A program made the position numbers and the translations under genes. Shown here in pieces: positions 1,535-64,000 of a stretch of 64,000 nt of DNA; the stretch's first letter is position 1; each line of letters starts with the position of its first letter. Below the pieces are notes generated by a model. That model saw only the letters and a list, made by a program, of their open reading frames with translations. It made no database searches and was not told the origin of the DNA. Where the stretch lies: the IMG/VR virus record IMGVR_UViG_3300042289_000986, positions 62,001 through 126,000 of that record. The stretch is one strand, 5' to 3'.

Positions 1535-2200
1535 ATGATTCTCTGTTTATCAGATATTCATTTAGGAAGTCCAATATGTCAGGCAGAATTGACATTAAAA
1601 ATATTAGAAGATTGCGAGTACGATAAACTTATAATTTGTGGTGATCTTTTAGATTCTTATAACATTCATAGACTTTGTAAAAAACAATGGAAAGTTTTAT
1701 CTGCCTTGAGGAAAATATCCAAAACTAAAGAGTGCATTTTCATTAAAGGAAATCACGATAAAAGTTTGGAAACCGTAAGTGCTTTGCTTGGTTTTGATTT
1801 TAAATTGGAACACATTGAAAAGATTGGTGGTAAAAAGTTTTATTTTGTTCATGGGGATAAATGGGATTATATAATTCAATTAAGACCATTGTTAACTGAA
1901 ATCGCATCGGGAATTTATTATTTTTTACAAAAAATAGATAAGACCCAAAAGTTTACAAGAAAATTAAAAAAGAAAATTAAAACTTGGAGATCATCTGCTG
2001 ATAAAGTTATGGAAAGAGTAGCTAATCACGGAAAAGATTTAAATTGTGATGTGGTTGTATTTGGACATACCCACATGCCAGAGCATAAAAACGTCAATGG
2101 AATAGAATGTGTTAATTTAGGTTCTCAGTGTGATCTACCAGTTACATACTGTAAAATAAGTAATAAAGGTAACATAACTTTAAAAAGTTTAGATAAATAG
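1535..2200 (+). CDS. Calcineurin-like metallophosphoesterase, LpxH (UDP-2,3-diacylglucosamine hydrolase)-like
   Basis: Motifs SDIHLG, GDLLD, GNHD, HGD, FGHTH, N(L)GS. Confidence 0.8.
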   Translation: MILCLSDIHLGSPICQAELTLKILEDCEYDKLIICGDLLDSYNIHRLCKKQWKVLSALRKISKTKECIFIKGNHDKSLETVSALLGFDFKLEHIEKIGGKKFYFVHGDKWDYIIQLRPLLTEIASGIYYFLQKIDKTQKFTRKLKKKIKTWRSSADKVMERVANHGKDLNCDVVVFGHTHMPEHKNVNGIECVNLGSQCDLPVTYCKISNKGNITLKSLDK

Positions 2201-2208
2201 TAATAGTT

Positions 2209-3045
2209 ATGTTCGTAGGTATTTTAGCTTTAACCGCATTTATTATTGCTGGTGTGGCAGCATATTTTTCTGTTTATGGTATTGCTACACTCTATGCAGG
2301 AGCATTTATTTCTGTTCTTGTCATGGCAGGAGCTTTGGAAGTCGGTAAGCTTGTAGCAACAAGTTTTCTTTACCGATACTGGCACAAGACTAATCTGTTG
2401 TTAAAAACTTATATTCTTGTTGCCATTTTAACTCTGATGGGAATTACATCAATGGGTATATTTGGATTTTTGACATCAGCTTATCAAACAAGTCTTATAG
2501 AATATTCTCAAGCAGAAACACAACAAGAATTTTTGGTATCGCAAAAAGCGATACTTGAAAAAGAATTAGAGTCTTTGGCAATGCGTGTTGATACCTTAAA
2601 TCAATCTCGTCTCTCTCAAGAACAAAGACTCCCATCAATGTCTCGTAGATCAGCAGCACCTGTTTATGAAGATATTAAAAAGTCTGGAGAAGAAATTACA
2701 CAATCTAAAGGAAGAATGAATCAAATATTTGAAGAAATAAAAGCCCTTGATTTACAAACACTGGAAGCACAAAAACAAAGTGGTAAACAAAAAGATATTG
2801 GAACACTCAAATATGCAGCAGAACTTTTTGGAACAGATATCAATACAATTGTTAAGTGGTTCACACTTGCTATTATTGTTGTATTCGATCCTTTGGCTAT
2901 TGCTTTAGTTTTAGCTTATAACATAGCAGCAAATAAAAAATTTGATGAAGAGGAAATTGTAGTCGAAGATGAAGAAAAAGAAGTTAAATTAATAAGAAAA
3001 ATTAAAGAAAAAATTTTACCATCAACAGCAAAATATAGAAACTAA
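2209..3045 (+). CDS. Membrane protein with long coiled coil (conserved myophage protein)
   Basis: Three N-terminal TM helices, coiled coil, C-terminal TM with VFDPLA; TAAATA upstream. Confidence 0.6.
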   Translation: MFVGILALTAFIIAGVAAYFSVYGIATLYAGAFISVLVMAGALEVGKLVATSFLYRYWHKTNLLLKTYILVAILTLMGITSMGIFGFLTSAYQTSLIEYSQAETQQEFLVSQKAILEKELESLAMRVDTLNQSRLSQEQRLPSMSRRSAAPVYEDIKKSGEEITQSKGRMNQIFEEIKALDLQTLEAQKQSGKQKDIGTLKYAAELFGTDINTIVKWFTLAIIVVFDPLAIALVLAYNIAANKKFDEEEIVVEDEEKEVKLIRKIKEKILPSTAKYRN

Positions 3046-3046
3046 T

Positions 3047-3187: not shown

Positions 3188-3196
3188 TTTTGAAAG

Positions 3197-4850: not shown

Positions 4851-4885
4851 TTGCCAATATTAAGCTACTGTGGTATATTTGTCAA
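4851..4885. promoter_or_regulatory. Overlapping divergent sigma70-type promoters
   Basis: Plus: TTGCCA-N17-TATATT; minus: TTGACA-N17-TAATAT, ending 7 nt before the ATG at 4849. Confidence 0.65.
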
Positions 4886-4894: not shown

Positions 4895-5227
4895 GTGAAT
4901 AAATATATGATGGAAGAACAAGAATACTTTCAACTGAATGAAAAACTGAAAGAAGAACTGGTTTTAAAATACGAAGCATTTGAAGTTAAAACTATTTTTT
5001 ATCCTAATGGTTTTAGTATTGTACCATATCCTTTTTATGAATCAATTGCTAGATGGCATAAAGATGTAGATGAGAAAATAATAGCAAGAGGAATGGCTAA
5101 AATTTGGAAATATCAAAAAAAGATAAACGATTTGTGTGAAATGTCTGATCCTGTGTTTGAAACTAGCTACGGCCATCCACAAATCGTCTGGGCTATATTT
5201 CCTGACAATATTGACACTCCAAATTGA
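4895..5227 (+). CDS. Hypothetical protein
   Basis: ORF downstream of the divergent promoter. Confidence 0.55.
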   Translation: MNKYMMEEQEYFQLNEKLKEELVLKYEAFEVKTIFYPNGFSIVPYPFYESIARWHKDVDEKIIARGMAKIWKYQKKINDLCEMSDPVFETSYGHPQIVWAIFPDNIDTPN

Positions 5228-5245
5228 TAATTATTAATATCTCCA

Positions 5246-6335: not shown

Positions 6336-6355
6336 AAAGTATAAGTATTCATACA

Positions 6356-7857: not shown

Positions 7858-7885
7858 AACCCCTCTCGAAAGAGAGGGGTTTTTT
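7858..7885 (+). terminator. Intrinsic terminator
   Basis: AACCCCTCTC-GAAA-GAGAGGGGTT then T-run. Confidence 0.85.
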
Positions 7886-7921
7886 ATTTGACTTTTAAAA
7901 TATTTTTAGTATATTCTTATT

Positions 7922-10564: not shown

Positions 10565-10787
10565 TTTTTGAATAAGTATAACATATGTTTGAAAGCGGAA
10601 ACTCATTTGAAGATAAAACATCTGATGCTTTTATAAATGAAGCAATAAAAGAAACGTTAGATAATTTAAAAATTAACCCACCAAAATTCCAAGCGGTTTT
10701 TGATGACGGTTCAACTGTAGATTTTGAAATTTACGAAGAAGCTATGGGTTTTTTACATAAAAACCCAAACTGTAAAGTATTTGTAAA

Positions 10788-11219
10788 ATGAAATTTAAAA
10801 TTTATTTTGAATCAAAAAATTTTAATTTAAATGTTTATTATAAACTTTTAAATAATTTTTTGAATTCACAAAAAAACTGGAACTTAAAAAAAATTGAAAA
10901 TGATCCATATAACCAAATGGAAATTGTTGATGAGAATGGAAAAAGGTATGGGAAAATTGAAAGAGATTATGATCCTGAAACAAAAACATTATATTTAAAT
11001 CATATCGGTGTGGGGTTTGATGAAAACGGTCAAAGAATGAAAGGTTTGGGGTTGGTTGATTTAATTTATAATTTTGAAAAACAAATCGTGCAAATGTATG
11101 GAATTGAAAACGTTTGCACAGAACCAGTAAATGATATTACAGATAAAAAATTCAAAGAAATATACCAAGATTACAAAATAGAGCAAAAAGACAATTATAT
11201 TTGCGCCTCGATTAAATAA
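10788..11219 (+). CDS. Possible GNAT-fold protein
   Basis: LYLNHIGV..QRMKGLGL resembles acetyl-CoA motif A; leader MKFKIYFES. Confidence 0.4.
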   Translation: MKFKIYFESKNFNLNVYYKLLNNFLNSQKNWNLKKIENDPYNQMEIVDENGKRYGKIERDYDPETKTLYLNHIGVGFDENGQRMKGLGLVDLIYNFEKQIVQMYGIENVCTEPVNDITDKKFKEIYQDYKIEQKDNYICASIK

Positions 11220-11228
11220 GTATAAGAT

Positions 11229-12821: not shown

Positions 12822-15300
12822 AAGCAAAACATCAATTCAAATATACATACGACGAATTTTGTGAAAACTTTTCACCAGTTGAAGTCATTTTTGATATACC
12901 AACAGGAGAAGTAACTATTACTCAAATGCTTTGGAATTTTGAGTGTTACTTGAAAGCTTGTGGCTTTGTCTTTGATGGACATTTGGAAGTTGTACCAGAA
13001 AGTGGTTATGATGTCATCGATGATACAGACTATTGTTGTATGGGTGATACTGATGGTTTAGAAGATGAACAATATATTATACCTCCAACAGTTAAATCTC
13101 CTTCTTATTGGGATAATCAACCGTCAAGCATTTGTTCTTCTGATAAACACAACATAACAGCGGAAGATCCTAAAAAGTTTTTTCCTCAACATGATAGCGG
13201 TCTTTCTACTACTTCTAGTTCTTTAGATAATGAGTGGACTAAAGCAGAAAAGAAACTCAAAGAATGGAATGAGGGAATTGCTAAACTTGATAACGAACAA
13301 AAAGAGAAAGCTAATGAAGATGCTCGTAAAATGTCTGATCTTCATTACGAAGCCACAAAAGAAGTGGTTAAGAATAAATGGGTTCATGGTATGTGCAATC
13401 CACCTTCACCTGATTGGAAAAAGAATAAATGAAGAAACCTACACAAAAACAAAAGATCGAAATGTATGAAAAATTCTTACATAAGATCAATATGTGTGTA
13501 ATGTGTTGTAATGATACAGGAGTTAGAGAACTTGTACACAATGCAGATGATTGGTCTTATATGCATCGTGTAGGAAACGGAGAACCATCTGAAAGAGAAC
13601 AACAAAGATTGATTACAAAAGCATTTTGGCAACTTTGCGATACTCCAGAATCAGATAAAGAAGTCGAAGAAAGACAAAGAATATATACTGAAAAGAAAAA
13701 AGAAAGAGAAGAAGCTGCTATAAATTTATGAAAAAGAAAAATAATAAATTCCAATACAAACCATATCCATCAACGGATGTAAGATCACCATATTATGATT
13801 CAAAATCAACAATTACGGAGGAACATTACACACTAGACGGAGATCATCCCGAAGATCGAATCTATAGAGATAAAGAATTTATCAACAGACTTCAATCACA
13901 TATTGATATAGTATATGATATTTTAGCTATGGACTTAAAACTTAACGAAAAGGGCAAAGAATGGCTTTTTGATTTTGTTTATAACGAAGAAGAAAATATT
14001 GAGTTTGAAGACTTCTTGGCAAAGTATAAGGTCAAGTATAAAGATCTAGTTACTTCAAATAGCTGGTATTATAATCAATAAAATATGATAACAAAACTAG
14101 TAGCATTATTCGCAATAGTCACCGCATCTATTGGATTGAGTGTAGCAACTCTCATTTATGGATGGGGATTAGAACCTAAAAGCTGGACCGCAATTATATT
14201 CTTTGGTATAGTTGGTCAAGTTATTGTAAGCAGTCTTTATAGAAAAATTATGGAAGATGACAAATGAAATACAGAATTAAAGAAGAAATAAAGATGGGTA
14301 AACATTACTTTTACCCTCAATATAAAAAATTCCTATTCTGGAAGAATATGACTGAACGTGATGTTAAGGATGTAGTTGTATACCCTCACCTAAAAGGAGC
14401 TAAAGATCATATTGAAATCTTTAAAGAGAGACTAAACAAGAAAAAGAAGCTTGATAGTTACAAACAAGTATTGTATCATTCCTATATATCATAGATGAAA
14501 TATAAATTTGTAGAAACTCAAGGTTGCACGGCATTTGGCTTCACTGTCAATGATGAAGACCTTGCTAATGTTTCCAAAGAGAAACAAAAAGAAATTATTG
14601 ATTATCTTTGTGAAAAAATGAAAGAAGAAATTGATAAAGGAACTGTTTTGTTTTCAGATATTGTTGGAGTTTTTCAAGAAACGGATCATGGTTCTGAAAA
14701 AGAACCTTGCGATCAATGCTATGATACTGTAAGCTGGACTATATGGGAGATTTAACTATGAATACAAATGAATATGTAAAAATTCTAGAAGAAGAATGTG
14801 GCAAAAACCAAGCACACAAGAAAAAAAGTATCAAAAAAAGTACAGGTATAAATGCTCTTTACATACCAGAAAAACCAAAGCCAGATTACAGTTGGACGAT
14901 TAAAGATCGTTTAAAAAATACTTTTATAATTCTTAATAACCGTTGGGTGTTTTTGAAAAACTACAACCCTCTGGATTTTAGATCTTATGAAGAAGAATAT
15001 AACCCATATGGGTTTGATAAGATATATACTAAATTTCACAGAACATCGACTCCATTAACTCGTTTTAAACTTTTTTGGGGTGAATTTGAAACTACTTTAA
15101 AAAATATTAAAGATGGTTTTTTATATACCCCACTCGCTGTTAAACATTATCAAAAAAATAAAGAAAGAATATCTTGGTTTGAAGAAAATCTTTCAAAGAT
15201 GTTTGCCGATAAGTTAGATGTTGATGTCAGAAAAGTATTGCATAAACATGGGTATGATCTTGACGGACAAGGTAGAATTTGTTATAAAGTAAAAGAATGA
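12818..15300 (+). other. Run of seven small abutting hypothetical ORFs (12818, 13429, 13728, 14085, 14264, 14495, 14743)
   Basis: Overlapping or abutting start/stop codons on the same strand, typical of phage early genes. Confidence 0.6.
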
Positions 15301-16888: not shown

Positions 16889-16970
16889 CTTTTATTAAAT
16901 GTATAAAAATGGTGTTATACTAAGCCAAACCATTATATAAAATGTTACATATAATATGTAAGTATTATAT

Positions 16971-17918: not shown

Positions 17919-17926
17919 AATAATAT

Positions 17927-18493
17927 TTATACAATTAAATCACTAACAATCAAAATTAGAGTTTTTGCTCTTGTTTCAAATTCTTCATCAGCACAAGGAG
18001 TTTCCAGTGTGCAATATGGAATGTTTCTTCTTCTCAATGCACGTTCTAAAGTTCCCTTATATGGTTGCTGACCATTTGAAATAACACCTTGATCTGTAAC
18101 ATCCCCATGTGCTTTTACTGCCAGTTGGATTTTACTTTTCATTAAAGCACCTTTTACCTTGTCTTCAATTTCTGGAGAACAATAAGCATAAACTCCATCT
18201 ACTTCATCATCTTCGTGTAAAGAAATAACAAGTGTTGGATTCAGTTCTTCAATTTTAGAAAGAAGTCTGTCTTGTAAATCGTTTTGATCATCAGTGTCAA
18301 AATGACGATTGGGATCTTTTCCATTCAATCTTCTTTTCTTAGTTTTATTTAAATTAGAATAAACCTTGACGTTTGGGAGATTTTTAAAATAGTTTGCAGC
18401 AATATTTCCAGCAGGTTCATCACCATGCAAACCACTAACAATCACAAAAACGTTTGGGTTTAAAAGATTTTCTACTAATGCGTCAAATTTCAC
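17927..18493 (-). CDS. M14-family Zn carboxypeptidase/deacylase (AstE/MpaA-like); start reassigned to GTG 18493
   Basis: GLHGDEPAG, DPNRHF, ISLHED, TLE; TAAGTA 5 nt before GTG. Confidence 0.8.
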   Translation of the reverse strand: MKFDALVENLLNPNVFVIVSGLHGDEPAGNIAANYFKNLPNVKVYSNLNKTKKRRLNGKDPNRHFDTDDQNDLQDRLLSKIEELNPTLVISLHEDDEVDGVYAYCSPEIEDKVKGALMKSKIQLAVKAHGDVTDQGVISNGQQPYKGTLERALRRRNIPYCTLETPCADEEFETRAKTLILIVSDLIV

Positions 18494-18689
18494 TTTAATA
18501 CTTATTTTCTTATAGACAAAAAGCCAAGTTGTGATAAAATAAAAAAAATGAAAAAGTACTGCATATTTCCTGATGAAACTAAAATAGAACTTCATTCAAT
18601 TTTAGATGTAACAGATACACAAACATATATCTGTTATTATGATGAAAATCTTCCACAAACACTTTGGGTTCCGAATGATTTTTTGAGCA

Positions 18690-20196: not shown

Positions 20197-20231
20197 TATG
20201 ATATATTTACTCCAAATTTAATCAATTTAAT

Positions 20232-20700: not shown

Positions 20701-20759
20701 TATTTAATATTTACAAAAAATACTTGTATCTTTTTAAAAATATGCCATAATTATATTCT

Positions 20760-22004: not shown

Positions 22005-22048
22005 TATTTATCCGAGCTATTATACATAAATAAGAGGTCGGATAAATA
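22005..22048. repeat. Inverted repeat carrying outward-facing TAAATA boxes
   Basis: TATTTATCCGA ... TCGGATAAATA (11-bp perfect arms). Confidence 0.7.
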
Positions 22049-22241: not shown

Positions 22242-22284
22242 CTTTTTTCTTGTCATTATTTAAACATCTGCTAGACTTAAAAAT

Positions 22285-22973: not shown

Positions 22974-23065
22974 ACAAAAGATACCATATCAAGAAAGCTA
23001 ATATATAGTATCTCACAAAAATATTTATTTGCATTTGCCAATTAAAGTGTTATATTTTTAGTACT

Positions 23066-24686: not shown

Positions 24687-25175
24687 ATGAATAAAGAATT
24701 AGAATTAAAGTTGGTAGAAAAATATCCTAAAATTCTTTTTGATTATGGTGGAGATATGAAAAAAACTTGTATGCATTGGGGAATGGAATGTTGTGATGGA
24801 TGGTACGATCTTTTAGACGAATTATTGGCTAAACTTGATTATATATCTAAACATTCGGGTGTTCAGGTTGTAGCAGATCAAATTAAAGAAAAATTTGGAA
24901 CATTAAGATTTTATTACTCAACGATTATTAAAACCGATTTTAACGTAGAACCTGTTGTTGATAAAATAATTTCAGATGTTGTTAATGCTGCTGAACGTCA
25001 ATCAGCTTATGTTTGTGAAAAATCTGGTAAAAGGGGTGTAACTTGTTCTAGTGTGGGTTGGTTGAGAACTCTATGTAAAGAAGAGGCAGATAAAGACGGC
25101 TATATCCCAATCAATCCACGCGATGCAAAATATTGGGATGAACTAAATAGTAAAAAGAATGATAAAGATCATTAA
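24687..25175 (+). CDS. Conserved phage hypothetical protein
   Basis: GW..L, QIKEKFGTLRFY, CEKSG, GWLRTLC. Confidence 0.65.
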   Translation: MNKELELKLVEKYPKILFDYGGDMKKTCMHWGMECCDGWYDLLDELLAKLDYISKHSGVQVVADQIKEKFGTLRFYYSTIIKTDFNVEPVVDKIISDVVNAAERQSAYVCEKSGKRGVTCSSVGWLRTLCKEEADKDGYIPINPRDAKYWDELNSKKNDKDH

Positions 25176-27831: not shown

Positions 27832-28055
27832 CAGTTAAGTATTATCATGACTGTTAAAGAATTAATAAATCGATTACAACAAATCAGTAATCAAGAAATG
27901 AAAGTTGTTGTGGATGGCTATGAAGATGGCTTTGATGATATCAAAGACCCAAAATTTATTGTTGCTTATGAGCAAATAGATCGTGATTGGTATAACGGAA
28001 AATATGAACAAAGTTCTTCTGGACAAGGTGGCAATCTTATGCTACTCTTGCCTAG

Positions 28056-37322: not shown

Positions 37323-37400
37323 GAGTTGAATTATGAGCTTTTTTGAGGGAAAGTCAATTTATTTGTTTGCTTTTATCTTCAAAACTGCTAAACTACTTGC

Positions 37401-38597: not shown

Positions 38598-39390
38598 CGA
38601 TTTAATTTTATTGGAAGAATCTTTTTCTCATATAAAGTTCTTTGATAAAAATCACACTTATACAATTAATAATAAACCAGCAAAAGAATCTGTTTCTGGT
38701 TTATTGAAAAATTTTGAAAAACCTTTTGAATCTGAAAAAATTGCAGGTTTTGTTGCGACAAGAGATCAAAAATCAGTAGAACAAGTTTTATCTGAATGGG
38801 AATTTGCAAAAAATTATTCATGTCATAAGGGATCAGAATTTCATTTATTTGTTGAAAATTATTTTAATAGAAAACAAATCACGATAGATTCAAAATCTTT
38901 AAAATTATTTTTTGATTCTAATCAAAGTTTTTATGATAACCAATCAACCGAAAAATACTATAAAGAGTTAGCACATTTAATAAAAAATTTTTTAAATTTT
39001 TATGATTGGTGGAAAAAAGATCATGTATTAATTAAATCTGAGTTTGTTGTTGGTGATGAAGAAAATGGTATTTGCGGAACTATCGACAACCTTTCTTATA
39101 ATAAGAAAACAAAAGAATTAGTTATTTTTGATTATAAAACTAATAAAGAAATTAAAAAAAGAAATCCAAGAGATGAAACATTTTTAAAACCAATCCAATA
39201 TTTGTCTCATTGTGAATACATAAAATACAGCCTTCAATTAAATTTATATCAATATATAATTGAAAAAAATTCACCATTCAAAGTTCCAAAGTCATATATT
39301 GTTTGGGTGGCTGATAAAGAAAACTATGAATTGATGCAAACGTTACAACTTCAAAAAGAAGCAAAAATGTTAATAGAATACTATAAATAG
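38527..39390 (+). CDS. PD-(D/E)xK exonuclease (Cas4/RecB-like); exact start uncertain
   Basis: GSEFH, SE, GTID, IFDYKT, QLNLY. Confidence 0.85.
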   Translation: MKKKLNFMEIPKKKIKNKLDLGFDDLILLEESFSHIKFFDKNHTYTINNKPAKESVSGLLKNFEKPFESEKIAGFVATRDQKSVEQVLSEWEFAKNYSCHKGSEFHLFVENYFNRKQITIDSKSLKLFFDSNQSFYDNQSTEKYYKELAHLIKNFLNFYDWWKKDHVLIKSEFVVGDEENGICGTIDNLSYNKKTKELVIFDYKTNKEIKKRNPRDETFLKPIQYLSHCEYIKYSLQLNLYQYIIEKNSPFKVPKSYIVWVADKENYELMQTLQLQKEAKMLIEYYK

Positions 39391-39902: not shown

Positions 39903-39946
39903 TTTTATAGAAATGGGAACAAACCAAGATAAATAATATTACAACT

Positions 39947-40807: not shown

Positions 40808-40834
40808 AAAAACCCCGCAATCGCGGGGTTTTTT
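40808..40834 (+). terminator. Intrinsic terminator (possibly bidirectional)
   Basis: AAAAACCCCGC-AATC-GCGGGGTTTTTT. Confidence 0.88.
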
Positions 40835-40851
40835 CTTTGTAAGTACTAGTA

Positions 40852-42535: not shown

Positions 42536-43077
42536 TTATACTAAGTTAACAAATTATAAACAGTTTGTCAACTTAAAAATCAAGGTAATTGAATTTGGAT
42601 TGTGTTTCCTTGAATTGGAGAAGAGTTTATTGGTATATCTTTTGGAACAAAAACTGGATTCTGTGATGGTTGTTGCTCTGCCATATTAGTTATTTCACCT
42701 ATTTTTAACCCCACATCTTTAATCAAAGAAATGGCTTTTTTTGATTTTCCATATAGCTGAATTAAATCACTTTTTTGTTCTGGTGTTAATGTTGGGTTAT
42801 TTTTAATGCATTGTGCAATTTTAGACATACCCGTCATTAAATAAACAAAACTGTCTGAGAGATCATCCACAATCGTTTGTAATGGCCAAGGGAAAGCAAC
42901 TGATGCGTCTGGTGGTGGTGTTGTTAAATTATCAGTTGGAAAGTTTCTTTGGTTTTGATAATTATAGCCGTCTTTAGTTGGTATAGGAGCAAAGTCTTTT
43001 CTTGGTGGTGCATTGTATGCTGGATACTGTGCAGGACCCCTATCATAGACTTCTTCTATAATTTTTTCCAAATTCAT

Positions 43078-43260: not shown

Positions 43261-43267
43261 GTTATAT

Positions 43268-44059
43268 TTACTTAGTATTCGAAGGTTTCCAAGTGTTCTT
43301 TTCGTTTTCTAATTTTTCAACAACAAATTTAACAAATTCAGATCTTACAATATCTTCTTTTGTAAATTGAAACCTATGAATACCGAATTTTTTAGATTCT
43401 TCACAAGTAAAAAGATCACAAATTTTTGAAAAACCACCTGCTTTATTTTCTGGTAAATCTGATTGCATGGGGTCACCACAAAAGATTATTTTGGAAAATT
43501 CTCCCATTCTGGTAATTGTCGTAATAAGTTCACGAAAACTAATATTTTGACATTCATCTACAATAATACATTTAGTAGCCCAGTGCAAACCTCGAATATA
43601 ATTTACTGGTGTCGCATTAAATCTTTCATCATTTCTTAATCTGTTGATTGATGCTTTATCTAAAAGTTCTTCGAGTTTTTCCATGAAAGGTACCATGTAT
43701 GCTTCAAACTTCTCATCAATAGTTCCTGGTAAATATCCGATTTTACTATCTGCGCTTTCTACTGCGCTTCTTACAAAGATTATGTCAGATATTTTTTTAT
43801 TTCTTAAAAGATGAAGTGCGGCATAAACAGCAGTAATTGTTTTTGATACACCTGCTGGTCCTTCTACAAACACACATCTAGTATTTTTATCTAAAAGAAT
43901 TTCAATTAATTCTTTTTGTTTTTTAGTCCAAGGAAGTTCTTTGATAAAGAAATCAAATGCAACCTTGTCTCTTTGATAAACATAAGGAGACGTATCCTTG
44001 GAAGTTTCCATGTTTTTTTCCAACGAAGACTCTTTACGACGAGTTTTCTTTTTAGTCAT
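43268..44059 (-). CDS. phoH: PhoH-like ATPase
   Basis: GPAGVSKT, IGYLPG, YIRG, DECQN, TRMGE.SK, GDPMQSD, DIVRS. Confidence 0.93.
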   Translation of the reverse strand: MTKKKTRRKESSLEKNMETSKDTSPYVYQRDKVAFDFFIKELPWTKKQKELIEILLDKNTRCVFVEGPAGVSKTITAVYAALHLLRNKKISDIIFVRSAVESADSKIGYLPGTIDEKFEAYMVPFMEKLEELLDKASINRLRNDERFNATPVNYIRGLHWATKCIIVDECQNISFRELITTITRMGEFSKIIFCGDPMQSDLPENKAGGFSKICDLFTCEESKKFGIHRFQFTKEDIVRSEFVKFVVEKLENEKNTWKPSNTK

Positions 44060-44720: not shown

Positions 44721-44798
44721 AATATTACTTATTCAAAGACAACACTAAAACAAATTAATAAAAATTGGTAAAAATAAAGATAAATAGTATTATAAAAT

Positions 44799-47288: not shown

Positions 47289-47322
47289 TCAAAAATATAG
47301 AATAAGGAGATAAATATAATAT

Positions 47323-47865: not shown

Positions 47866-47891
47866 TATTATAATCCGCCATAAATAGTATT

Positions 47892-50436: not shown

Positions 50437-50465
50437 TATTAGAATAGTACTAATAAGTACTATAT

Positions 50466-52562
50466 ATGGCAAGTATCGATGATTTACTTTCTCAAGTAAG
50501 AATTGACGGATCAGTTAGTGCTAAAGATTTTATTAACAGTTTGTTAGTATCATCTGATGATCAGTTTTATCTCGATAATATTAAAAATGATTTTAAAAGA
50601 AGTTTTTTAGAACCTTTTTCTAAAAAAATAAAAGATTTAAAATTAAAAGACGTTAAAGAGGTTTTTGATCCTTTTGGTATTGCTGATCAACAAGATGATT
50701 TAAAAAAAGACATTAAAAATTATAGGGAAAAAATTAAAAAATTTTTAAATTCAAATTTTTTGTCTGATAGAGAAACTGAGGAAACCAATAAAGAAAAAAT
50801 TAAATCCTCTACTGTAAATCAAGTTTTACCTGATAAAATTCAAAGATTGCCAGAGATTGAAAATAATGAAGTTAAAGAAAAAAATATATTAGATGCAATT
50901 AAAGAAAAATTTAGCTTATTAACAAATAATATTCAACAGTTTGAAAAAGCTAAAAAATTTCAAGAACAACAAACACTAGGAGAAACAATACCACAATTTA
51001 ACTATGCGGATGAAACTAAAAAATTTTTAACAGATTTGATATTAAACAAATTAATCGAGCGTTTACCTAAAGCAGAAAAACCAAAAACACAAACACCAGA
51101 AGAAAATGAGGGTGGATTAGGGTTTTTGGGAATATTAGGATTATTAACACTATTAAAAAGATTAAAAGATGGTTTACATGCTTTAAAAATTGGATTTTTA
51201 AGATTTGTTGATGAGTTAATGAAACTGCCAGGTAGAATATGGAACGCCTTAAAAACTTTAGGATTAAAATTAAGAGATTTTAAAGCATGGTTAGAATTAA
51301 GATGGGAAAAATATGTTTCTGAACCACTTAAAAGATTGTTCAACTCACTTAAATTTGATGAACTGTTCGACTCACTAAAACTAAAATGGACTCAAATGAT
51401 TGATGATGTTAAAAAGTTTTTAAAATTTGATGATATTGCAGAATGGATAAATTTAAAATTTGAAAAATACATCAAAGGTCCAATATTATCATTAATAGAC
51501 AAATTAAGTGAGTTTAAAACAAGAGTTGTGACAATGTTTGATGATTTCATTGATATGTTTAAAGCTGGAGGAAAGTTTAGTTTTGTTGAAACTGCTATAA
51601 AGGGATTAGGTTGGCTTTTTTCAAAATTAAAAGCACCATTTGAATTATTAAAACCTTTAGGAAGACCCGTTTTAGGGTTTTTTAAAGGTTTGGGAAAAAT
51701 TTTAGGTCCTTTGGCTTTGGTAATTGATCCTGTTATAACAACAATTCAAACATTTTTTAATTTATGGGGTGATGAAAATTTGTCACCTTTACAAAAGGGC
51801 ATTGCTATCATAACAGGAATTGTAGCTAGTTTTGGTGATATTTTATTTTTTGTCATTGATATGTTATCACAAGGTGTAACGGGATTGTGGAATTTTATTA
51901 CAGGAAATGGTTTTAAAACCGAAAATCCAGTTTCAAAATGGATGAATGAGGAGTTATATAGAGGAGAAGGTGGATTTGGTGCTGGTGCCGCTATGGGTGC
52001 TGCTGAAATGATGCGAAGCTATAACAAAGATCCGAATGGAATGTTTACAGACATGGCGGAAGGTGCAATAAAGAGAGGATCGTTTGGTTTTATTGATCCA
52101 TTTAAAAATAAAGAAGCTGAAAGAAGAGAAAAACGAATGAACGAAATGGAAGAGGATGGTGTTGTCGATGATGCAGAAATGGAAGAGATTGACAGTTGGG
52201 GTACTTTACCAGTTGACGATTTTGTAAAACCTAAAGGAAAGGGTTCTTCTTTGATTGTTGATCCTCAAACGCAACAAATTTTTGAAACCTCACCAAATGA
52301 TGAAATTTGGGCATTAAAAAGTGGAGGAGTTTTAGATAAAGCTTTAGGTGAATTAAAAAATATAATGACAGATGTAAACAAAAACATTTTGTCTATGAAT
52401 AAAAATTTAGCAAATACAAAATCAGTTAATAATTCTTCTATTAACATATCAGGAGGAGCTTCAAATAATAAAGATTATTTGTTTGAAAATACTAGAGATC
52501 CTATTTTTGCGGATAGAACAAATTGGTGGAATCTTTCACAAAGGACTAGATCAACTGTCTAA
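50466..52562 (+). CDS. Putative tape-measure/hub protein (gp29-like)
   Basis: Long helical protein with periodic F/W and hydrophobic Gly-rich segments; position in tail module. Confidence 0.6.
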   Translation: MASIDDLLSQVRIDGSVSAKDFINSLLVSSDDQFYLDNIKNDFKRSFLEPFSKKIKDLKLKDVKEVFDPFGIADQQDDLKKDIKNYREKIKKFLNSNFLSDRETEETNKEKIKSSTVNQVLPDKIQRLPEIENNEVKEKNILDAIKEKFSLLTNNIQQFEKAKKFQEQQTLGETIPQFNYADETKKFLTDLILNKLIERLPKAEKPKTQTPEENEGGLGFLGILGLLTLLKRLKDGLHALKIGFLRFVDELMKLPGRIWNALKTLGLKLRDFKAWLELRWEKYVSEPLKRLFNSLKFDELFDSLKLKWTQMIDDVKKFLKFDDIAEWINLKFEKYIKGPILSLIDKLSEFKTRVVTMFDDFIDMFKAGGKFSFVETAIKGLGWLFSKLKAPFELLKPLGRPVLGFFKGLGKILGPLALVIDPVITTIQTFFNLWGDENLSPLQKGIAIITGIVASFGDILFFVIDMLSQGVTGLWNFITGNGFKTENPVSKWMNEELYRGEGGFGAGAAMGAAEMMRSYNKDPNGMFTDMAEGAIKRGSFGFIDPFKNKEAERREKRMNEMEEDGVVDDAEMEEIDSWGTLPVDDFVKPKGKGSSLIVDPQTQQIFETSPNDEIWALKSGGVLDKALGELKNIMTDVNKNILSMNKNLANTKSVNNSSINISGGASNNKDYLFENTRDPIFADRTNWWNLSQRTRSTV

Positions 52563-52570
52563 ATATTAAT

Positions 52571-53987: not shown

Positions 53988-54380
53988 TAATTCATTCAAA
54001 TCAAAATAAAATCTTGCGTATATTTTTCTTTTAGATTTGTTACCGACAGTATATGAATATATTTTATTATTTATTTTAAAAATGAAATGCTTAGTCATTA
54101 ATTTTTTAAAAAATAAAATTTCAAAATCTACATCTGAATTTTTTTTAAAATATTCAATTAAATCTTTTTCAGAAATTTCTTTTAATAAATCTAAGTTTTC
54201 TAATATTTTTAATTTATCTTGGATTTTTTTCCAAAGTCCTTTTTTATCGTAAACATCCAAAAAATAAATAGGCCATTTGCTATTATAATTAGCGGTTCGA
54301 TCATTTTTTCCTAAAATGATATCAAACTCTTCATTTTTTAAAAATGATTTTTCCATTTTTCTTATAAGTATTTATTAATC

Positions 54381-59334: not shown

Positions 59335-59404
59335 ACTAAATATATAGTATACATTTAAAAATAAAATTATCAAGAAAAAATAAGTTATCTGAGTAAGTTT
59401 TTAT

Positions 59405-61048: not shown

Positions 61049-62553
61049 AAAAAGTTTCTGGTAATCATTTAGGAATTGTAGTTAATACAACTGACCCCGA
61101 AAATAGAGGAAGGGTTCAAGTTTTTGTTCCACACATTTCCACAACTTTATATTCTGGTTGGAATGAAAACTTAAAAGATATAAAATTTAAAACATTTACA
61201 TCTGATGTTTTTACTGACGAAATAAAACAAAGATTGTGGTCTTTGTTACCTTGGGCAGAAGCTGCGGTCCCGTGTTGGGGTGGTGGTACTGGTGCTCCAA
61301 TTGATGAAAGTACAGGGTTACCAATGCCAATACCAACGGATCAAGCTTTTGCTTCTCAAGGACCTTCTGGCACGATTAGATATAAATCAGGCATATCTGG
61401 TGATGGTTTACAGGGATTTGTTAAAGAAAGGACTGCCGCTTTTTTTGGACAGTTTCCAAACGCAACTATAACGAGTACAACTGGTGGAAGGCACTCTGCT
61501 GGAAGTCTTCATTATTCTGGAAGAGCGATTGATATTAGAACTTATGATCAAAACCCAGAAACAATTCGTCAAATGGTAAATTGGTGGGGTACAGTTGGTG
61601 GCGCAACAGAAATAGGATATGAAGTAAACAGTAGCAGTCCTCACTTACATATTGGTTTTAGAACAGATGGTAGAAGAACCGCTTTTAACGTTGGAAGCAC
61701 CCCTTCATGGTGGGGTGGTTTTGCTTCAGGATTTAGAAATGGAAGTTTACAACAATCTCCAACAAATCCTGGTACATCACAAGCTATTGCTACGGCATCA
61801 GTTAATCCTAGATCTGTTCCAGCAAAAGATGGGTTAAATAATAAAAAAGGAGAAAGAACTGGATCTGAAACAGGTCCTTCACAAGTTTCTGGTACAGGAT
61901 TTAGTCAAAATTTTTTGAATGCTGTAAAAGATTGGGAAGCTGGACCAAACAGAGAATATTTTAACTCAACTGCAATAGATGATGGTGGAATTTATACAAT
62001 AGGTTATGGAACAGAATCTAGACCAGGCGCAACAATTACCGAAGCTGAAGCATCCAGAGCATTGATTGCAGATTTAAGTAAAAGAGCTATTGTGGTAAAT
62101 AATGCATTAAATAATCGAGGAATTACGCTAACACAAAGTCAAAAAGAAGCGTTGATATCTTATACATTTAATAGAGGACCTCGCGGACTTAATGAACTTT
62201 TAAATAAATCTGGTAAAACTTGGGATTCTATAGGACCAAACATGTTAAAATATTGGGGAAAAAATCCAGATGCTCAAGCAGGATTAGTTAATCGTCGCCA
62301 AAAAGAACTAGCACATGCCAATAATGATGGTTCTGGTGGTGGTGCTGTAGAAGGAGACGGTTCAAATGTTTTTAGAACTACAAATGCTGGACAAAATGCA
62401 TATGCCTCAATCAACAGTCCAAGAGCAGGAGGACCGATGGGCTTTTATTCTACACCCGCAGTTGGAGCAAAAGTTTGGGTATTTTTTGAAGCAGAAAATC
62501 CACAAAGACCTGTATTTTTTGCAAATGCTTACGAACCTTCAAATATAATCTAA
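61045..62553 (+). CDS. gp5-like hub: OB-fold with inserted M15-type peptidase and GH24 lysozyme domains
   Basis: GIVVNTTDPENRGRVQV..PWA and P.VGAKVWVFFE..PQRPV flank SLHYSGRAIDI..HLHIG and WEAG..YTIGYG..ALISYTFNRG..GLVNRRQKE. Confidence 0.85.
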   Translation: MKKVSGNHLGIVVNTTDPENRGRVQVFVPHISTTLYSGWNENLKDIKFKTFTSDVFTDEIKQRLWSLLPWAEAAVPCWGGGTGAPIDESTGLPMPIPTDQAFASQGPSGTIRYKSGISGDGLQGFVKERTAAFFGQFPNATITSTTGGRHSAGSLHYSGRAIDIRTYDQNPETIRQMVNWWGTVGGATEIGYEVNSSSPHLHIGFRTDGRRTAFNVGSTPSWWGGFASGFRNGSLQQSPTNPGTSQAIATASVNPRSVPAKDGLNNKKGERTGSETGPSQVSGTGFSQNFLNAVKDWEAGPNREYFNSTAIDDGGIYTIGYGTESRPGATITEAEASRALIADLSKRAIVVNNALNNRGITLTQSQKEALISYTFNRGPRGLNELLNKSGKTWDSIGPNMLKYWGKNPDAQAGLVNRRQKELAHANNDGSGGGAVEGDGSNVFRTTNAGQNAYASINSPRAGGPMGFYSTPAVGAKVWVFFEAENPQRPVFFANAYEPSNII

Positions 62554-62588
62554 ACTTGTATATTTGAATGCTTTAATAAATATTAATA

Positions 62589-64000
62589 ATGGCTACTTTC
62601 TCTTATAGTCCTACAAAATTAAACGAAAACGAATCCAAACAATATAGTGTAATTGGTGGTGAGGCAGGTTCTATTTCTATGGGACAACATGTGGTAAAAG
62701 ATCCTTATGGTTCTTTTATTTCGGAAGATAGATCTCATATGATTTTATCCGATAAATTTGGTAGCTTAATACAATTTATTGGAGGAAAAGTAGTATTTAA
62801 AACTGCATCCGATTTGTGCATGTTTACAAATCAAAACATGTTTATGTCGGTTACAGGTGATGTTCAATCGAGTATTGGTGGTAGTAAACATGATTTTGTT
62901 GAGGGTGATGTTACTGCACAGGCAGGTAATGACAAACAAAGAGCCGCTGCTGAAAAACTTCAAGGATTAACAAGTCAAATAGATAAAGAAAAATTAGATA
63001 CTATTAAATCTACCGAAGGACAAGAAATGGATTGTCCAGTTTGTTCTCAAAAACATTTGTCAGAAAGAGGTTCTGCTTTAGTTGGAAAAATTTTTAAAAC
63101 GTTAAGAAGATTTTTACCAAACATGGCATATCCTTTAGATATTGTTCAAAAGATTATAAATTTTTTGGTAGTTCCTTTTTTAAATGCATCAACTACAAAT
63201 TTATCATTAACTGGAGGAAAAGGCTGTGGTAGTCCTGGCTGTAAAAATGGAAGAATAAAATCGCCAGCAACTGCTGTTCAAGAAGGAAACAGTAAAGCAG
63301 CCGATGCATATGAATCTAGAAAACTTCAAATTGCAAGCGCACAAACAGAAATGGGAAAAGGTGGTGCAAAGGTTGTTAGAGAAGGGGGCGATGTAGTTTG
63401 GCAGGTTGGTTTAGCAAAAAATGATGCACCAACAGTAACGTACAAAGATCCGGTTCCTACGGCATTATATTTACAAAATTCAAAAATACCTGGTGAATTT
63501 TTTGCTCTTGGCGCAAAAGGAACAGCAAAACAAGCTATACATTCAGATCCTTTAATTAATCCAGGTAGCTTATTGCTTGATGTTGCTAATAAGTTTGAAG
63601 TTTCGGCAGGATCGCCAGGTGTAGATTTAAAAACTTCTGGTAAAGCAACTTTTTCTGGTGCAGTTACAAATATTGTTGCAAACCAAGGAGAATTAACTTT
63701 AACATCAGGTAATAAAACAACTTTAAAAGGAAAAAATGTTTTAATTGATGCTAGAGATAGATCTGGTGATAGTGGAGTTAAAATTGAATCTGATAATACT
63801 CTTGTTGCTGGAAAGTTAAGTGTAACTGGAGATCTTGCTTTAAAAGGATCTTTGATGATGGATGGGGGATTGTATGTTACACATTTAACATGCCCATCAG
63901 AAAGAATTCAAACATCTCCTAGTGGTGGAGCACATTATGTTCATTCAAATGCAACGTGGAATGATTTTGCTCCAACAAAAGCAAGTGCTTTGGATATATT
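62589..64000 (+). CDS. gp5 C-terminal (spike, beta-helix-like) protein, runs off window (not in track)
   Basis: ATG 6 nt after TAAATA; frame open to end; V-x-G-D/K-type repeats; CPVC..CGSPGC insert. Confidence 0.7.
   Translation, partial: MATFSYSPTKLNENESKQYSVIGGEAGSISMGQHVVKDPYGSFISEDRSHMILSDKFGSLIQFIGGKVVFKTASDLCMFTNQNMFMSVTGDVQSSIGGSKHDFVEGDVTAQAGNDKQRAAAEKLQGLTSQIDKEKLDTIKSTEGQEMDCPVCSQKHLSERGSALVGKIFKTLRRFLPNMAYPLDIVQKIINFLVVPFLNASTTNLSLTGGKGCGSPGCKNGRIKSPATAVQEGNSKAADAYESRKLQIASAQTEMGKGGAKVVREGGDVVWQVGLAKNDAPTVTYKDPVPTALYLQNSKIPGEFFALGAKGTAKQAIHSDPLINPGSLLLDVANKFEVSAGSPGVDLKTSGKATFSGAVTNIVANQGELTLTSGNKTTLKGKNVLIDARDRSGDSGVKIESDNTLVAGKLSVTGDLALKGSLMMDGGLYVTHLTCPSERIQTSPSGGAHYVHSNATWNDFAPTKASALDI

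What the first reader, a model, noticed from the sequence alone, without database searches (positions are those of the whole stretch)
2190..62591. Promoter boxes sit 4-9 nt before start codons and SD sequences are nearly absent: a largely leaderless transcriptome
Seen: TAA(A/G)TA followed by 5-6 nt then the start codon at 10585, 11229, 16971, 17918-, 18493-, 21998-, 32609, 39396, 40852, 44720-, 47323, 47892, 50466, 52571 and 62589. TTGnnn-N16/17-TAnnnT ends 6-7 nt before ATG at 4849-, 7922, 22285, 31092 and 37401. Known: the T4 late promoter is TATAAATA with the start a few nt downstream. Inference: transcripts begin at or next to the AUG, and the late sigma tolerates A/G at position 4. AT richness makes chance hexamers common, so the fixed spacing is the real signal.
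Basis: partly seen in the sequence, partly recalled or inferred. Interest (0 to 1): 0.65.

Follow-up and report, generated by a model that had tools for sequence, protein, structure and literature searches.

The report
Phage promoters abutting start codons
In this 212-kb freshwater T4-like phage and its uncultured relatives, both early and late promoter boxes sit 5-8 bases before the start codons and ribosome-binding (Shine-Dalgarno) sites are almost absent, so most transcription units are predicted to make leaderless mRNAs, something shown experimentally so far only for Thermus phages.

Summary
In the whole 211,587-bp genome, TAA(A/G)TA ends 5-6 nt before 31 start codons (3-4 expected) and 5-8 nt before 46. 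A sigma70-like TTGnnn-N16-18-TAnnnT ends 5-8 nt before 27 (2.3 expected). SD-like 4-mers precede 7% of genes, which is background; the same pipeline gives 57% for T4. The phage is a deep-branching T4-superfamily myovirus with a gp55-type late sigma. Late boxes precede virion genes and sigma70-like boxes precede replication genes. Box type and position are conserved in relatives at about 50-80% protein identity while flanks diverge. T4 and P-SSM3 place their late boxes mostly 17-29 nt upstream; Mosig does so for most genes. Terminator-promoter-ATG packing and divergent start codons 12-35 nt apart leave no room for leaders. The best reading is that both promoter classes start transcription at or within a few nt of the AUG, that downstream cistrons are translated by coupling, and that SD is kept only for the capsid gene. 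No RNA data could be obtained, so transcription start sites are inferred, not shown. This is a new variant of a known kind: Thermus phage and Deinococcus leaderless architectures are the precedents.

The parts
2194..2199 (+). late box GATAAATA, 9 nt before ATG 2209 (278-aa protein)
6342..6347 (+). late box TATAAGTA, 8 nt before ATG 6356
10573..10578 (+). late box AATAAGTA, 6 nt before ATG 10585; only 20 nt separate the end of tRNA-Asp (10564) from the ATG
11217..11222 (+). late box AATAAGTA, 6 nt before ATG 11229; its TAA is the stop codon of the upstream gene
16959..16964 (+). late box TGTAAGTA, 6 nt before ATG 16971
17924..17929 (-). late box TATAAATA, 5 nt before ATG 17918
18499..18504 (-). 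ATAAGTA 5 nt before an internal GTG at 18493; doubtful start (first ATG of the ORF is at 18595)
20204..20209 (-). late box AGTAAATA, 7 nt before ATG 20196; the divergent neighbour starts 35 nt away at 20232
20708..20713 (-). late box TGTAAATA, 7 nt before ATG 20700
22005..22010 (-). late box GATAAATA, 6 nt before ATG 21998
25144..25149 (+). late box ACTAAATA, 9 nt before ATG 25159
27836..27841 (+). late box GTTAAGTA, 5 nt before ATG 27847
32598..32603 (+). late box TATAAGTA, 5 nt before ATG 32609 (inside the upstream ORF)
37120..37125 (-). late box GATAAGTA, 5 nt before ATG 37114
39384..39389 (+). late box TATAAATA, 6 nt before ATG 39396
39930..39935 (+). late box GATAAATA, 11 nt before ATG 39947 (short-leader variant)
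40840..40845 (+). late box TGTAAGTA, 6 nt before ATG 40852; lies within the 17 nt between the terminator T-run and the ATG
43265..43274 (-). two overlapping late boxes, 4 and 8 nt before ATG 43260
44726..44731 (-). late box AATAAGTA, 5 nt before ATG 44720
44781..44786 (+). late box GATAAATA, 12 nt before ATG 44799 (tail sheath)
47311..47316 (+). late box GATAAATA, 6 nt before ATG 47323 (tail tube); conserved in more than 40 orthologs; AAGGAG lies just 5' of the box
47881..47886 (+). late box CATAAATA, 5 nt before ATG 47892; conserved in all 5 distinct orthologs
50454..50459 (+). late box AATAAGTA, 6 nt before ATG 50466 (698-aa protein)
52560..52565 (+). late box TCTAAATA, 5 nt before ATG 52571; its TAA is the stop codon of the upstream gene
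54365..54370 (+). late box TATAAGTA, 10 nt before ATG 54381 (terminase); box conserved in relatives with spacers of 5-13 nt
54369..54374 (-). late box AATAAATA, 12 nt before ATG 54356; overlaps the terminase box in a 24-nt divergent intergenic region
62577..62582 (+). late box AATAAATA, 6 nt before ATG 62589 (702-aa protein)
4857..4885 (-). sigma70-like TTGACA-N17-TAATAT, ends 7 nt before ATG 4849
5211..5240 (+). sigma70-like TTGACA-N18-TAATAT, ends 5 nt before ATG 5246
7888..7915 (+). sigma70-like TTGACT-N16-TATATT, ends 6 nt before ATG 7922; starts right after the terminator T-run
14707..14735 (+). sigma70-like TTGCGA-N17-TAAGCT, ends 7 nt before ATG 14743 (weak match, inside the upstream ORF)
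22250..22277 (+). sigma70-like TTGTCA-N16-TAGACT, ends 7 nt before ATG 22285
23029..23058 (+). sigma70-like TTGCAT-N18-TATTTT, ends 7 nt before ATG 23066
31057..31085 (+). sigma70-like TTGACA-N17-TAGGAT, ends 6 nt before ATG 31092
31968..31995 (+). sigma70-like TTGCCA-N16-TAACAT, ends 6 nt before ATG 32002
37367..37394 (+). sigma70-like TTGCTT-N16-TAAACT, ends 6 nt before ATG 37401 (AAA-type ATPase)
42543..42571 (-). sigma70-like TTGACA-N17-TAACTT, ends 7 nt before ATG 42535
59344..59373 (-). sigma70-like TTGATA-N18-TACTAT, ends 9 nt before ATG 59334
7858..7881 (.). bidirectional intrinsic terminator (10-bp stem, 6 GC pairs) immediately upstream of the 7888-7915 promoter
40808..40833 (.). bidirectional intrinsic terminator (11-bp stem) whose T-run ends 17 nt before ATG 40852

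Best explanation
The window belongs to a 211.6-kb freshwater myovirus of the T4 superfamily. It runs a T4-style temporal programme with two promoter types. Early and replication genes use host-sigma70-type promoters (TTGACA-like, 16-18 bp, TAnnnT). Virion genes use a -10-only late box, (A/G)TAA(A/G)TA(T), read by a phage gp55-type sigma.

In this clade both promoter types are placed so that the -10 element ends 5-8 nt before the start codon. That is the normal distance from a -10 element to the transcription start. Transcripts are therefore predicted to begin at the A of the AUG, or up to a few nt upstream of it (about 8 nt at most, where orthologous spacers reach 13 nt). They have no room for a Shine-Dalgarno site and would be translated by the leaderless route, in which the ribosome recognises a 5'-terminal AUG.

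The roughly 100 downstream cistrons overlap or lie within 10 nt of the preceding gene. They are most likely translated by termination-reinitiation coupling. SD-led initiation is kept for very few genes, notably the major capsid gene.

Shown here: the positions, statistics, conservation and class-function mapping of the boxes; the presence of gp55; and the absence of SD. Inferred: the actual transcription start sites, use of host RNA polymerase, the leaderless translation route, and coupling.
For: 1. Positional peaks. TAARTA at spacer 5-6: 31 genes against about 3-4 expected; at spacer 5-8: 46 against 5-7. Sigma70-like pairs at spacer 5-8: 27 against 2.3. Both peaks are also seen without gene calls. 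The stop-codon artefact is excluded.

2. The -35 hexamer lies 29-31 nt before the ATG and the -10 hexamer 6-7 nt before it. The ATG therefore occupies the +1 position of a canonical sigma70 promoter.

3. A gp55 homologue is encoded: g189, genome 152,111-152,848. It matches T4 gp55 by phmmer at E = 5e-10 and phrog_234 'late sigma transcription factor' at E = 7e-26, and it lies next to the gp47 homologue as in T4. The box equals T4 TATAAATA minus its first T, and nothing is conserved where a -35 would be. This matches the published T4 late promoter: a -10-like element at the -10 position with no -35 (PMC2988020; PMC7892883).

4. Class-function mapping. Late boxes precede tail tube, sheath stabiliser, tail fibres, adaptor and structural proteins. 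Sigma70-like boxes precede DNA polymerase, primase, gp46, UvsY and helicase.

5. Anatomical constraints.
- At 7922, terminator, -35, -10 and ATG are packed into 36 nt.
- At 40852, only 17 nt lie between the terminator T-run and the ATG, and they hold the box.
- At 10585, only 20 nt separate a tRNA from the ATG.
- Divergent start codons lie 8, 12, 24, 26, 33 and 35 nt apart.

6. Conservation.
- The tube-gene box is kept in 21 distinct relatives at 50-82% identity with scrambled flanks, and in 39-47% identity orthologs.
- Orthologs of late-class genes keep a late box in 11 of 14 cases (G001) and 11 of 12 (G002).
- Late-to-early switching is almost absent.
- The DNA polymerase promoter TTGATT-N16/17-TAnnnT-N6/7-ATG is kept in three genomes.

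7. Contrast with the same pipeline. SD-like 4-mers precede 7%, 5% and 6% of genes in the clade, against 57% in T4, 47% in Mosig and 26% in P-SSM3. The late box lies at 5-6 nt in the clade, at 17-29 nt in T4 and mostly at 19-27 nt in P-SSM3.

8. The same geometry has been shown experimentally to give leaderless mRNAs. In Deinococcus a -10 motif lies 6-7 bp upstream of ORFs (PMC12340547). In Thermus phages most transcripts start at the A or G of the initiator codon (bioRxiv 10.64898/2026.04.20.719267).

9. Independent gene calls on public assemblies give the same starts for the sheath, tube and two following genes.
Against: - No transcript 5' ends are available. No RNA run was listed, and public contigs carrying the tube gene are DNA-type.
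- The distance from box to start site is unknown for this gp55 homologue, which carries an N-terminal extension of about 100 aa.
- Orthologous spacers reach 8-13 nt, so some transcripts probably have leaders of a few nt.
- gp33 and gp45 homologues were not identified.
- Raw counts of sigma70-like hexamer pairs do not exceed shuffles.
- The early class is weaker in relative G002.
- Low 5' structure is shared by all gene starts, so it does not single out the boxed genes.
- The host and its ability to translate leaderless mRNA are unknown.
Confidence: 0.72

Rival explanations
1. The boxes act in the RNA rather than the DNA. They would be AU-rich, non-SD translation enhancers or ribosome (S1) landing sites on leadered, polycistronic mRNAs, which would explain their fixed distance from the AUG.
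For: The boxes occupy the place where an RBS would sit. SD spacers also vary by several nt. Operon-internal genes are enriched for generic AT-rich words upstream. Some boxes lie only a few nt after the upstream gene.
Against: - The second class carries a properly spaced -35 hexamer 16-18 bp upstream, which has no meaning in RNA.
- The late box matches the T4 late promoter, and a gp55 sigma is encoded.
- The two box types split by gene function in the T4 manner.
- TAACTA and TAATTA are not enriched in this genome, so recognition is sequence-specific rather than a matter of AU content.
- Boxes follow strong terminators directly.
- The 102 coupled genes lack the box.
Confidence: 0.08
2. The boxes are ordinary promoters, and the lack of SD merely mirrors a host that does not use SD (for example Bacteroidota). 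Close packing of promoter and ATG would then be genome compaction, and ribosomes would load on short leaders by the host's SD-independent route rather than by a 5'-AUG leaderless route.
For: A at -3 (69% in coupled genes), T at -1 and G depletion resemble the Kozak-like context reported for SD-independent bacteria (the comparison with those bacteria is from my own knowledge). Spacers of 8-13 nt occur in relatives. The genome is 31% GC and freshwater.
Against: - There is no Bacteroidota-type TAnnTTTG box at any fixed position, and the early promoters are canonical TTGACA/TAnnnT.
- The capsid gene keeps AGGAG(G) 6-10 nt before its ATG in three genomes while the flanks diverge, so the host ribosome evidently uses SD.
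- A leader of 0-3 nt cannot carry any upstream signal.
Confidence: 0.12
3. The peak is a compositional or annotation artefact: AT-rich chance hexamers, TAA stop codons of tightly packed upstream genes, or wrongly called start codons.
For: The genome is 31% GC. Raw hexamer-pair counts equal those in shuffles. Six boxes coincide with upstream stop codons.
Against: - Shuffles, column-preserving nulls, sliding windows and internal ATGs all fail to reproduce the peak.
- The peak persists in genes with gaps of at least 25 nt (27 against 2.4 expected).
- It persists without gene calls.
- The same pipeline gives no peak in T4 or P-SSM3.
- N-termini are co-linear in orthologs, and independent gene calls agree.
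Confidence: 0.02

Closest known systems
Thermus phages phiYS40 and Lalka27a (experimentally leaderless phage transcriptomes)
   Same: Large virulent phages in which most transcripts start at the A or G of the initiator codon, with a distinct -10-type late promoter class (bioRxiv 10.64898/2026.04.20.719267).
   Different: Those phages are unrelated to T4. They infect Deinococcota, where leaderless mRNAs are the host norm, and their late box is TAGGGT. Here the phage is T4-superfamily with a gp55 sigma and an ATAA(A/G)TA box, the host is unknown but apparently able to use SD, and start sites are not mapped.
'-10 region adjacent to ORF' expression mode of Deinococcus-Thermus (also Actinobacteria)
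   Same: A TAnnnT -10 motif lies 6-7 bp upstream of the ORF in about one third of genes and produces leaderless mRNA; adding a -35 at 17 bp boosts it (PMC12340547; PMC4007540). The early class here has an identical geometry.
   Different: That is a cellular genome feature in high-GC phyla, where the remaining genes use SD. Here it is a viral genome in which the remaining genes also lack SD.
Bacteriophage T4 late promoters (gp55/gp33/gp45, TATAAATA)
   Same: A -10-only box at the -10 position, no -35, a gp55-type sigma, and use for virion genes (PMC2988020, PMC7892883).
   Different: In T4 the box lies 17-29 nt before the ATG and 57% of genes have SD-like 4-mers. Here the box abuts the ATG, the first T of the T4 octamer is not conserved, G is accepted at the sixth position of the T4 octamer, and gp33 and gp45 were not found.
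Cyanomyovirus and pelagimyovirus late promoter NATAAATA
   Same: The same 7-mer core in aquatic T4-like phages (PMC2984593). A minority of genes in Mosig (6 at spacer 5) and distant tube-gene orthologs already have the box next to the ATG.
   Different: In P-SSM3 and Mosig most boxes are 15-28 nt upstream, and 26-47% of genes have SD-like 4-mers. The papers read say nothing about leaderless mRNAs.
Single leaderless phage genes such as lambda cI from PRM (own knowledge; cited as Shean and Gottesman 1992 in PMC12340547)
   Same: Transcription starts at the A of the AUG and translation proceeds without SD.
   Different: Those are isolated regulatory genes, not a genome-wide architecture covering both early and late classes.

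Membership tests
T4-type late transcription system | gp55-family late sigma factor encoded | tested here: met
   g189 (genome 152,111-152,848, minus strand): phmmer against T4 gp55 E = 5.4e-10; phrog_234 'late sigma transcription factor' E = 7e-26; weak Sigma70_r2 match. It is adjacent to the gp47 homologue.
T4-type late transcription system | -10-like box related to TATAAATA with no conserved -35 | tested here: met
   The consensus is (A/G)TAA(A/G)TA(T) in 61-72 sites in each of 3 genomes. The 12 columns 5' of the box are unconserved.
T4-type late transcription system | Box precedes late (virion) genes | tested here: met
   Tube, sheath stabiliser, tail fibres, adaptor and structural proteins carry the box; replication genes do not.
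T4-type late transcription system | gp33 co-activator and gp45 sliding clamp present | tested here: inconclusive
   T4 gp33: best phmmer E = 0.036. T4 gp45: best E = 0.017. The clamp loader gp44 is present at E = 7e-37. Both proteins diverge fast, so absence is not shown.
T4-type late transcription system | Transcription starts about one helical turn downstream of the box centre | not testable with these tools
   No RNA run was listed.
Leaderless mRNA architecture | -10 element ends about 5-8 nt before the start codon | tested here: met
Leaderless mRNA architecture | No Shine-Dalgarno site upstream | tested here: met
   SD-like 4-mers precede 7% of genes (background is 4%), against 57% in T4.
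Leaderless mRNA architecture | Primary 5' end maps at (or within a few nt of) the start codon | not testable with these tools
   Searches gave no transcript data.
Sigma70-type early promoters | TTGACA-like -35, 16-18 bp spacer, TAnnnT -10, at a fixed place relative to the gene | tested here: met
   27 at spacer 5-8 against 2.3 expected; 23 genes at spacer 6 in G001. The built-in scanner recovers the sites at 4849(-), 5246 and 7922. Raw counts are not above shuffles.
Bacteroidota-type SD-independent expression | TAnnTTTG -7 promoter box; SD not used at all | tested here: not met
   No positional TAnnTTTG signal. A conserved AGGAG(G) precedes the capsid gene in 3 genomes.

The most novel reading that the evidence does not exclude
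A whole clade of T4-superfamily phages has given up 5' leaders and Shine-Dalgarno sites as an expression strategy, although its host can use SD. Both host-sigma70 early promoters and gp55 late promoters would fire directly onto the AUG. The phage may also tilt the host translation apparatus towards leaderless and re-initiating mRNAs, through changes to initiation factors or the ribosome, as a form of host shut-off, while keeping SD only for the capsid gene. The first half (leaderless from both promoter classes in a T4-like clade) is likely. The second half (active remodelling of host translation) is pure conjecture that nothing here excludes; the probability given refers to that second half.
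Probability: 0.12. Interest if true: 0.85.

Novelty: new variant of a known kind. Interest (0 to 1): 0.62.

Why it matters
T4 is the textbook case for phage gene expression, with leadered, SD-driven mRNAs and much 5'UTR-based regulation (RegA, RegB, translational repression). A widespread freshwater branch of the same superfamily appears to do without 5'UTRs and SD altogether. If so, that layer of control is absent or replaced. It would also show that gp55-type promoters can feed leaderless translation, and that leaderless expression at genome scale is not confined to phages of Deinococcota or Actinobacteria.

In practice, gene finders that rely on RBS models will mis-call starts in these phages. 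The box-to-ATG rule gives a simple way to place starts and temporal classes in uncultured genomes. Distant tube-gene orthologs and a pelagimyophage show the same layout for some late genes, which suggests the phenomenon is under-appreciated across aquatic T4-like phages.

Tried and rejected
- **RNA evidence.** The look-up of sequencing runs listed no RNA run, so read laying could not be used. Exact-protein contigs and the metagenome scan returned only DNA-type contigs, and none begins at the predicted start.
- **Host inference.** The one-piece tmRNA argues weakly against SAR11 and picocyanobacteria. The only named-genome hit is a 9-kb contig binned in a Lake Mendota 'Beijerinckiaceae' MAG. I judge this a binning artefact, on my own knowledge that this family is high-GC while the phage clade is about 31% GC. 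The host remains unknown.
- **Phage-encoded initiator tRNA.** One tRNA-Met is fully paired at 1:72. The other has a U1-U72 mismatch but lacks the three G-C pairs in the anticodon stem. Not convincing.
- **Stop-codon artefact.** Excluded.
- **Hidden non-SD RBS motif in operon-internal genes.** Only generic AT-rich words were found.
- **Bacteroidota-type promoters.** None found.
- **5' folding energy.** Starts are less structured than internal windows (p = 1e-7), but equally so for coupled genes, so this does not discriminate.
- **Predicting new small ORFs from two orphan strong sigma70-like sites.** There is no ATG after 9089 and only an 11-codon ORF after 12112. Uninformative.
- **Close annotated relatives.** megablast against phages found nothing. 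The best cultured relatives are only 30-39% identical.
- **Thermus phage phiYS40 primary paper (PMC1885378).** Not held. The claim is cited through a later preprint from the same group.
- **PurZ (Z-genome) idea for the adenylosuccinate synthetase homologue.** The protein is nearer PurA than PurZ structures.

Full report
**What the window is.** The 64-kb window is bases 62,001-126,000 of a 211,587-bp IMG/VR virus record with terminal repeats, rated complete, at 31-32% GC. It encodes:
- a contractile tail (sheath, tube, baseplate hub), a T4-type large terminase and structural proteins;
- nucleotide-metabolism genes and an RNA ligase;
- 14 tRNAs and a one-piece tmRNA.

Outside the window lies a T4-type replication module: gp32, gp41, UvsX, gp43, gp46, gp47, gp44, UvsY and a primase. 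The head genes are also outside: protease, scaffold and a gp23-type capsid protein. The DNA polymerase and terminase are only 30-39% identical to those of any cultured phage. The phage is therefore a deep, uncultured branch of the T4 superfamily.

Eighty related contigs were retrieved, with terminase identity of 64-83% and lengths up to 226 kb. One sits in a Lake Mendota assembly, and the exact tube protein occurs in 90 blocks of public assemblies. This is a common freshwater lineage.

**Checking the observation.** All 20 cited sites are in the sequence as described (coordinates). The one exception is 18493(-), an internal GTG of doubtful standing.

I built a gene set that ignores upstream sequence: first ATG of the ORF, a codon-usage score and greedy overlap removal, giving 252 genes. 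The results were:
- TAA(A/G)TA ends 5-6 nt before 31 starts and 5-8 nt before 46.
- Local shuffles give 2.6 and 5.3; a column-preserving null gives 4.0 and 6.6.
- The background further upstream is 0.3 per position, and internal ATGs show nothing.
- A count over all ATGs, without any gene model, gives the same peak, strongest for TAAGTA.

TAARTA contains TAA, so I tested whether packed stop codons make the peak. Only 6 of 50 boxes coincide with the upstream stop. Among 113 genes with a gap of at least 25 nt or an opposite-strand neighbour, 27 have the box at 5-8 nt against 2.4 expected.

For the sigma70-like class:
- TTGnnn-N16-18-TAnnnT ends 5-8 nt before 27 starts against 2.3 in shuffles.
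- Any other 4-nt window holds 3.0 on average.
- The -35 hexamer ends 29-31 nt before the ATG.
- Without gene calls, stringent matches are followed by an ATG at 6-7 nt about three times more often than at other distances.
Position is the signal.

Shine-Dalgarno sites are indeed missing. GGAG, GAGG or AGGA lies at -18..-5 in 7% of genes (a control window gives 4%), G is depleted from -1 to -11, and only two or three well-placed strong cores exist in the genome.

**What the boxes are.** Five lines of evidence say promoters.

1. The phage encodes a gp55-type late sigma next to its gp47 homologue. The box consensus, (A/G)TAA(A/G)TA(T) with nothing conserved further 5', is the T4 late box without its first T. 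T4 late promoters are a -10-like element at the -10 position with no -35 (PMC2988020; PMC7892883).

2. The other class has a correctly spaced -35, which only makes sense in DNA.

3. The two classes divide as in T4. Late boxes precede tube, sheath stabiliser, tail fibres, adaptor and structural proteins. Sigma70-like boxes precede DNA polymerase, primase, gp46, UvsY and helicase.

4. The boxes follow terminators and RNA genes directly.
   - At 7858-7922, a 10-bp-stem terminator, TTGACT, 16 bp, TATATT, 6 nt and the ATG fill 65 nt with no spare base.
   - At 40808-40852, only 17 nt separate the T-run from the ATG, and they hold TAAGTA.
   - At 10585, only 20 nt separate tRNA-Asp from the ATG.
   - Divergent genes have start codons 8-35 nt apart. 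At genome 34,642/34,655 two late-class genes are 12 nt apart, each box overlapping the other's start codon.

5. The boxes are conserved where the surrounding sequence is not.
   - The tube-gene box is present in 21 distinct relatives at 50-82% identity, and in orthologs down to 39% identity from 38-45% GC marine contigs.
   - A and G alternate at box position 4 between orthologs.
   - Genome-wide, orthologs of late-class genes keep a late box in 11 of 14 and 11 of 12 cases. Early-class orthologs stay early in 6 of 7 and 2 of 7 cases, and box-less genes stay box-less.
   - The DNA polymerase promoter keeps TTGATT-N16/17-TAnnnT-N6/7-ATG in three genomes.

**From geometry to leaderless mRNA.** A -10 element that ends 5-8 nt before a purine is the standard arrangement for starting transcription on that purine. 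Two experimental systems show that this layout yields leaderless mRNAs. In Deinococcus, a TAnnnT motif 6-7 bp before about a third of ORFs does so (PMC12340547; PMC4007540). In Thermus phages phiYS40 and Lalka27a, most transcripts start on the A or G of the initiator codon.

Here, 81 of 252 genes have a box at 4-9 nt (50 late, 31 early). About ten more have the late box at 10-15 nt. A further 102 are within 10 nt of, or overlap, the preceding gene, including 31 four-base ATGA overlaps. More than half of the genes that could head a transcription unit carry a box in the leaderless position, and almost no boxes sit further upstream. The operon-internal genes have no SD and no other specific word upstream. 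Termination-reinitiation coupling is the simplest inference.

Orthologous spacers of 8-13 nt suggest that some units have leaders of a few nucleotides rather than none.

**Is this just the host?** Apparently not. The major capsid gene, the most abundant product, has no adjacent box. It has AGGAG 6 nt before its ATG here, AGGAGG at 10 nt in G001 and AGGAGG at 8 nt in G002, with diverged flanks. The tube gene keeps AAGGA(G) just 5' of its box. The host ribosome can therefore use SD, and the phage mostly does not offer one. No Bacteroidota-type TAnnTTTG box is positioned anywhere. The host itself could not be identified.

**Comparison with other T4-like phages.** The same gene caller and counts were run on six genomes:

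| Genome | Genes with SD-like 4-mer at -18..-5 | Late box position before the ATG | Sigma70-like box at spacer 5-8 |
|---|---|---|---|
| This phage | 7% | 5-8 nt | 27 |
| Relative G001 | 5% | 5-6 nt | 35 (23 at exactly 6 nt) |
| Relative G002 | 6% | 5-6 nt | 15 |
| T4 | 57% | 17-29 nt | 0 |
| Mosig | 47% | mostly 15-28 nt, 6 genes at 5 nt | 4 |
| P-SSM3 | 26% | mostly 19-27 nt | 2 |

An exact-spacing pattern search agrees: 27 vs 17 and 28 vs 12 in the relatives, but 4 vs 15, 7 vs 14 and 11 vs 13 in T4, Mosig and P-SSM3. The near-leaderless late layout thus exists for a few genes in other aquatic T4-like phages and has been generalised to both promoter classes in this clade. The cyanomyovirus papers I read describe the NATAAATA box but not this placement. 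phiKZ and AR9 have long leaders.

**Limits.**
- No RNA data exist for this phage in the resources available, so start sites, the polymerase used and the translation route are inferences.
- gp33 and gp45 were not found.
- The gp55 homologue has an extra lysine-rich and acidic N-terminal region of about 100 aa, of unknown role.
- The early class is weaker in one relative.

**Verdict.** I rate it a new variant of a known kind: leaderless phage transcriptomes and -10-adjacent ORFs are known, but not in the T4 superfamily and not for a gp55-type late promoter.

Noticed in passing
genome 39,600-56,600 (outside the window; L003:1600-18600): A 17-kb island of 44% GC in a 31% GC genome. It has few AT-type ORFs, five tRNAs (Arg-TCT, Lys, Met, Arg-CCG, Cys), a 671-aa ORF with a weak HATPase_c_3 match, a GP88-family protein and an Api92-like domain. 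It could be a foreign insertion, a mobile element or an assembly chimera.
   Followed up: partly
window 3194-3653 (-): A phage-encoded one-piece tmRNA (RF00023, 138 bits), with tag peptide ADEEMLLAA according to ARAGORN. tmRNAs are known in marine T4-like phages, though those are mostly two-piece (PMC9004378).
   Followed up: partly
window 18690-19703 (+): A short (337 aa) adenylosuccinate synthetase homologue (PF00709, E = 1e-82) carrying a PurZ-type PHROG label. By sequence it is much nearer solved PurA structures (E = 1e-54) than phage PurZ structures (E = 1e-20), so there is no good sign of a diaminopurine genome.
   Followed up: partly
genome 152,111-152,848 (-) (L006:8111-8848): The gp55 homologue carries an N-terminal extension of about 100 aa, lysine-rich then strongly acidic, that T4 gp55 lacks. 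No alternative start codon lies near residue 100. Only residues from about 110 onward aligned to the two relatives (80-86% identity); whether the extension exists there was not examined.
   Followed up: partly
genome 191,214 (capsid gene start; outside the window): The major capsid gene is one of the two or three genes with a strong, well-placed SD (AGGAG/AGGAGG). The SD is conserved in both complete relatives and lies downstream of a hairpin that follows the scaffold gene.
   Followed up: yes
genome 34,642 / 34,655 (outside the window): Two divergent late-class genes have start codons 12 nt apart. Each ATAAATA box begins within the reverse complement of the other gene's ATG.
   Followed up: partly
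window 7316-7392 (+): A tRNA-Met(CAT) with a U1-U72 mismatch at the top of the acceptor stem, but without the three G-C pairs of initiator tRNAs, and with a low Rfam score (36.9 bits). Its identity (initiator, elongator or Ile-lysidine) is open.
   Followed up: partly
window 9061-9089 (+): A strong sigma70-like site (TTGACA-N17-TATGTT with an upstream TG) in a 590-nt stretch without called genes and with no ATG 4-9 nt downstream. It may be the promoter of an RNA gene.
   Followed up: partly
L106-L113 (Pelagibacter phage Mosig) and L171-L199 (marine tube-gene orthologs): Mosig has 6 genes with ATAAATA exactly 5 nt before the ATG. Tube-gene orthologs at 39-47% identity from 38-45% GC marine contigs have the box 6-11 nt before the ATG and no SD. 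Near-leaderless late genes may be common in aquatic T4-like phages.
   Followed up: partly
L148 (JBIPLL010000599.1): A 9-kb contig of this low-GC phage clade is binned in a Lake Mendota MAG labelled Beijerinckiaceae. This is probably a binning error rather than a host link; that judgement rests on my own knowledge that the family is high-GC.
   Followed up: no
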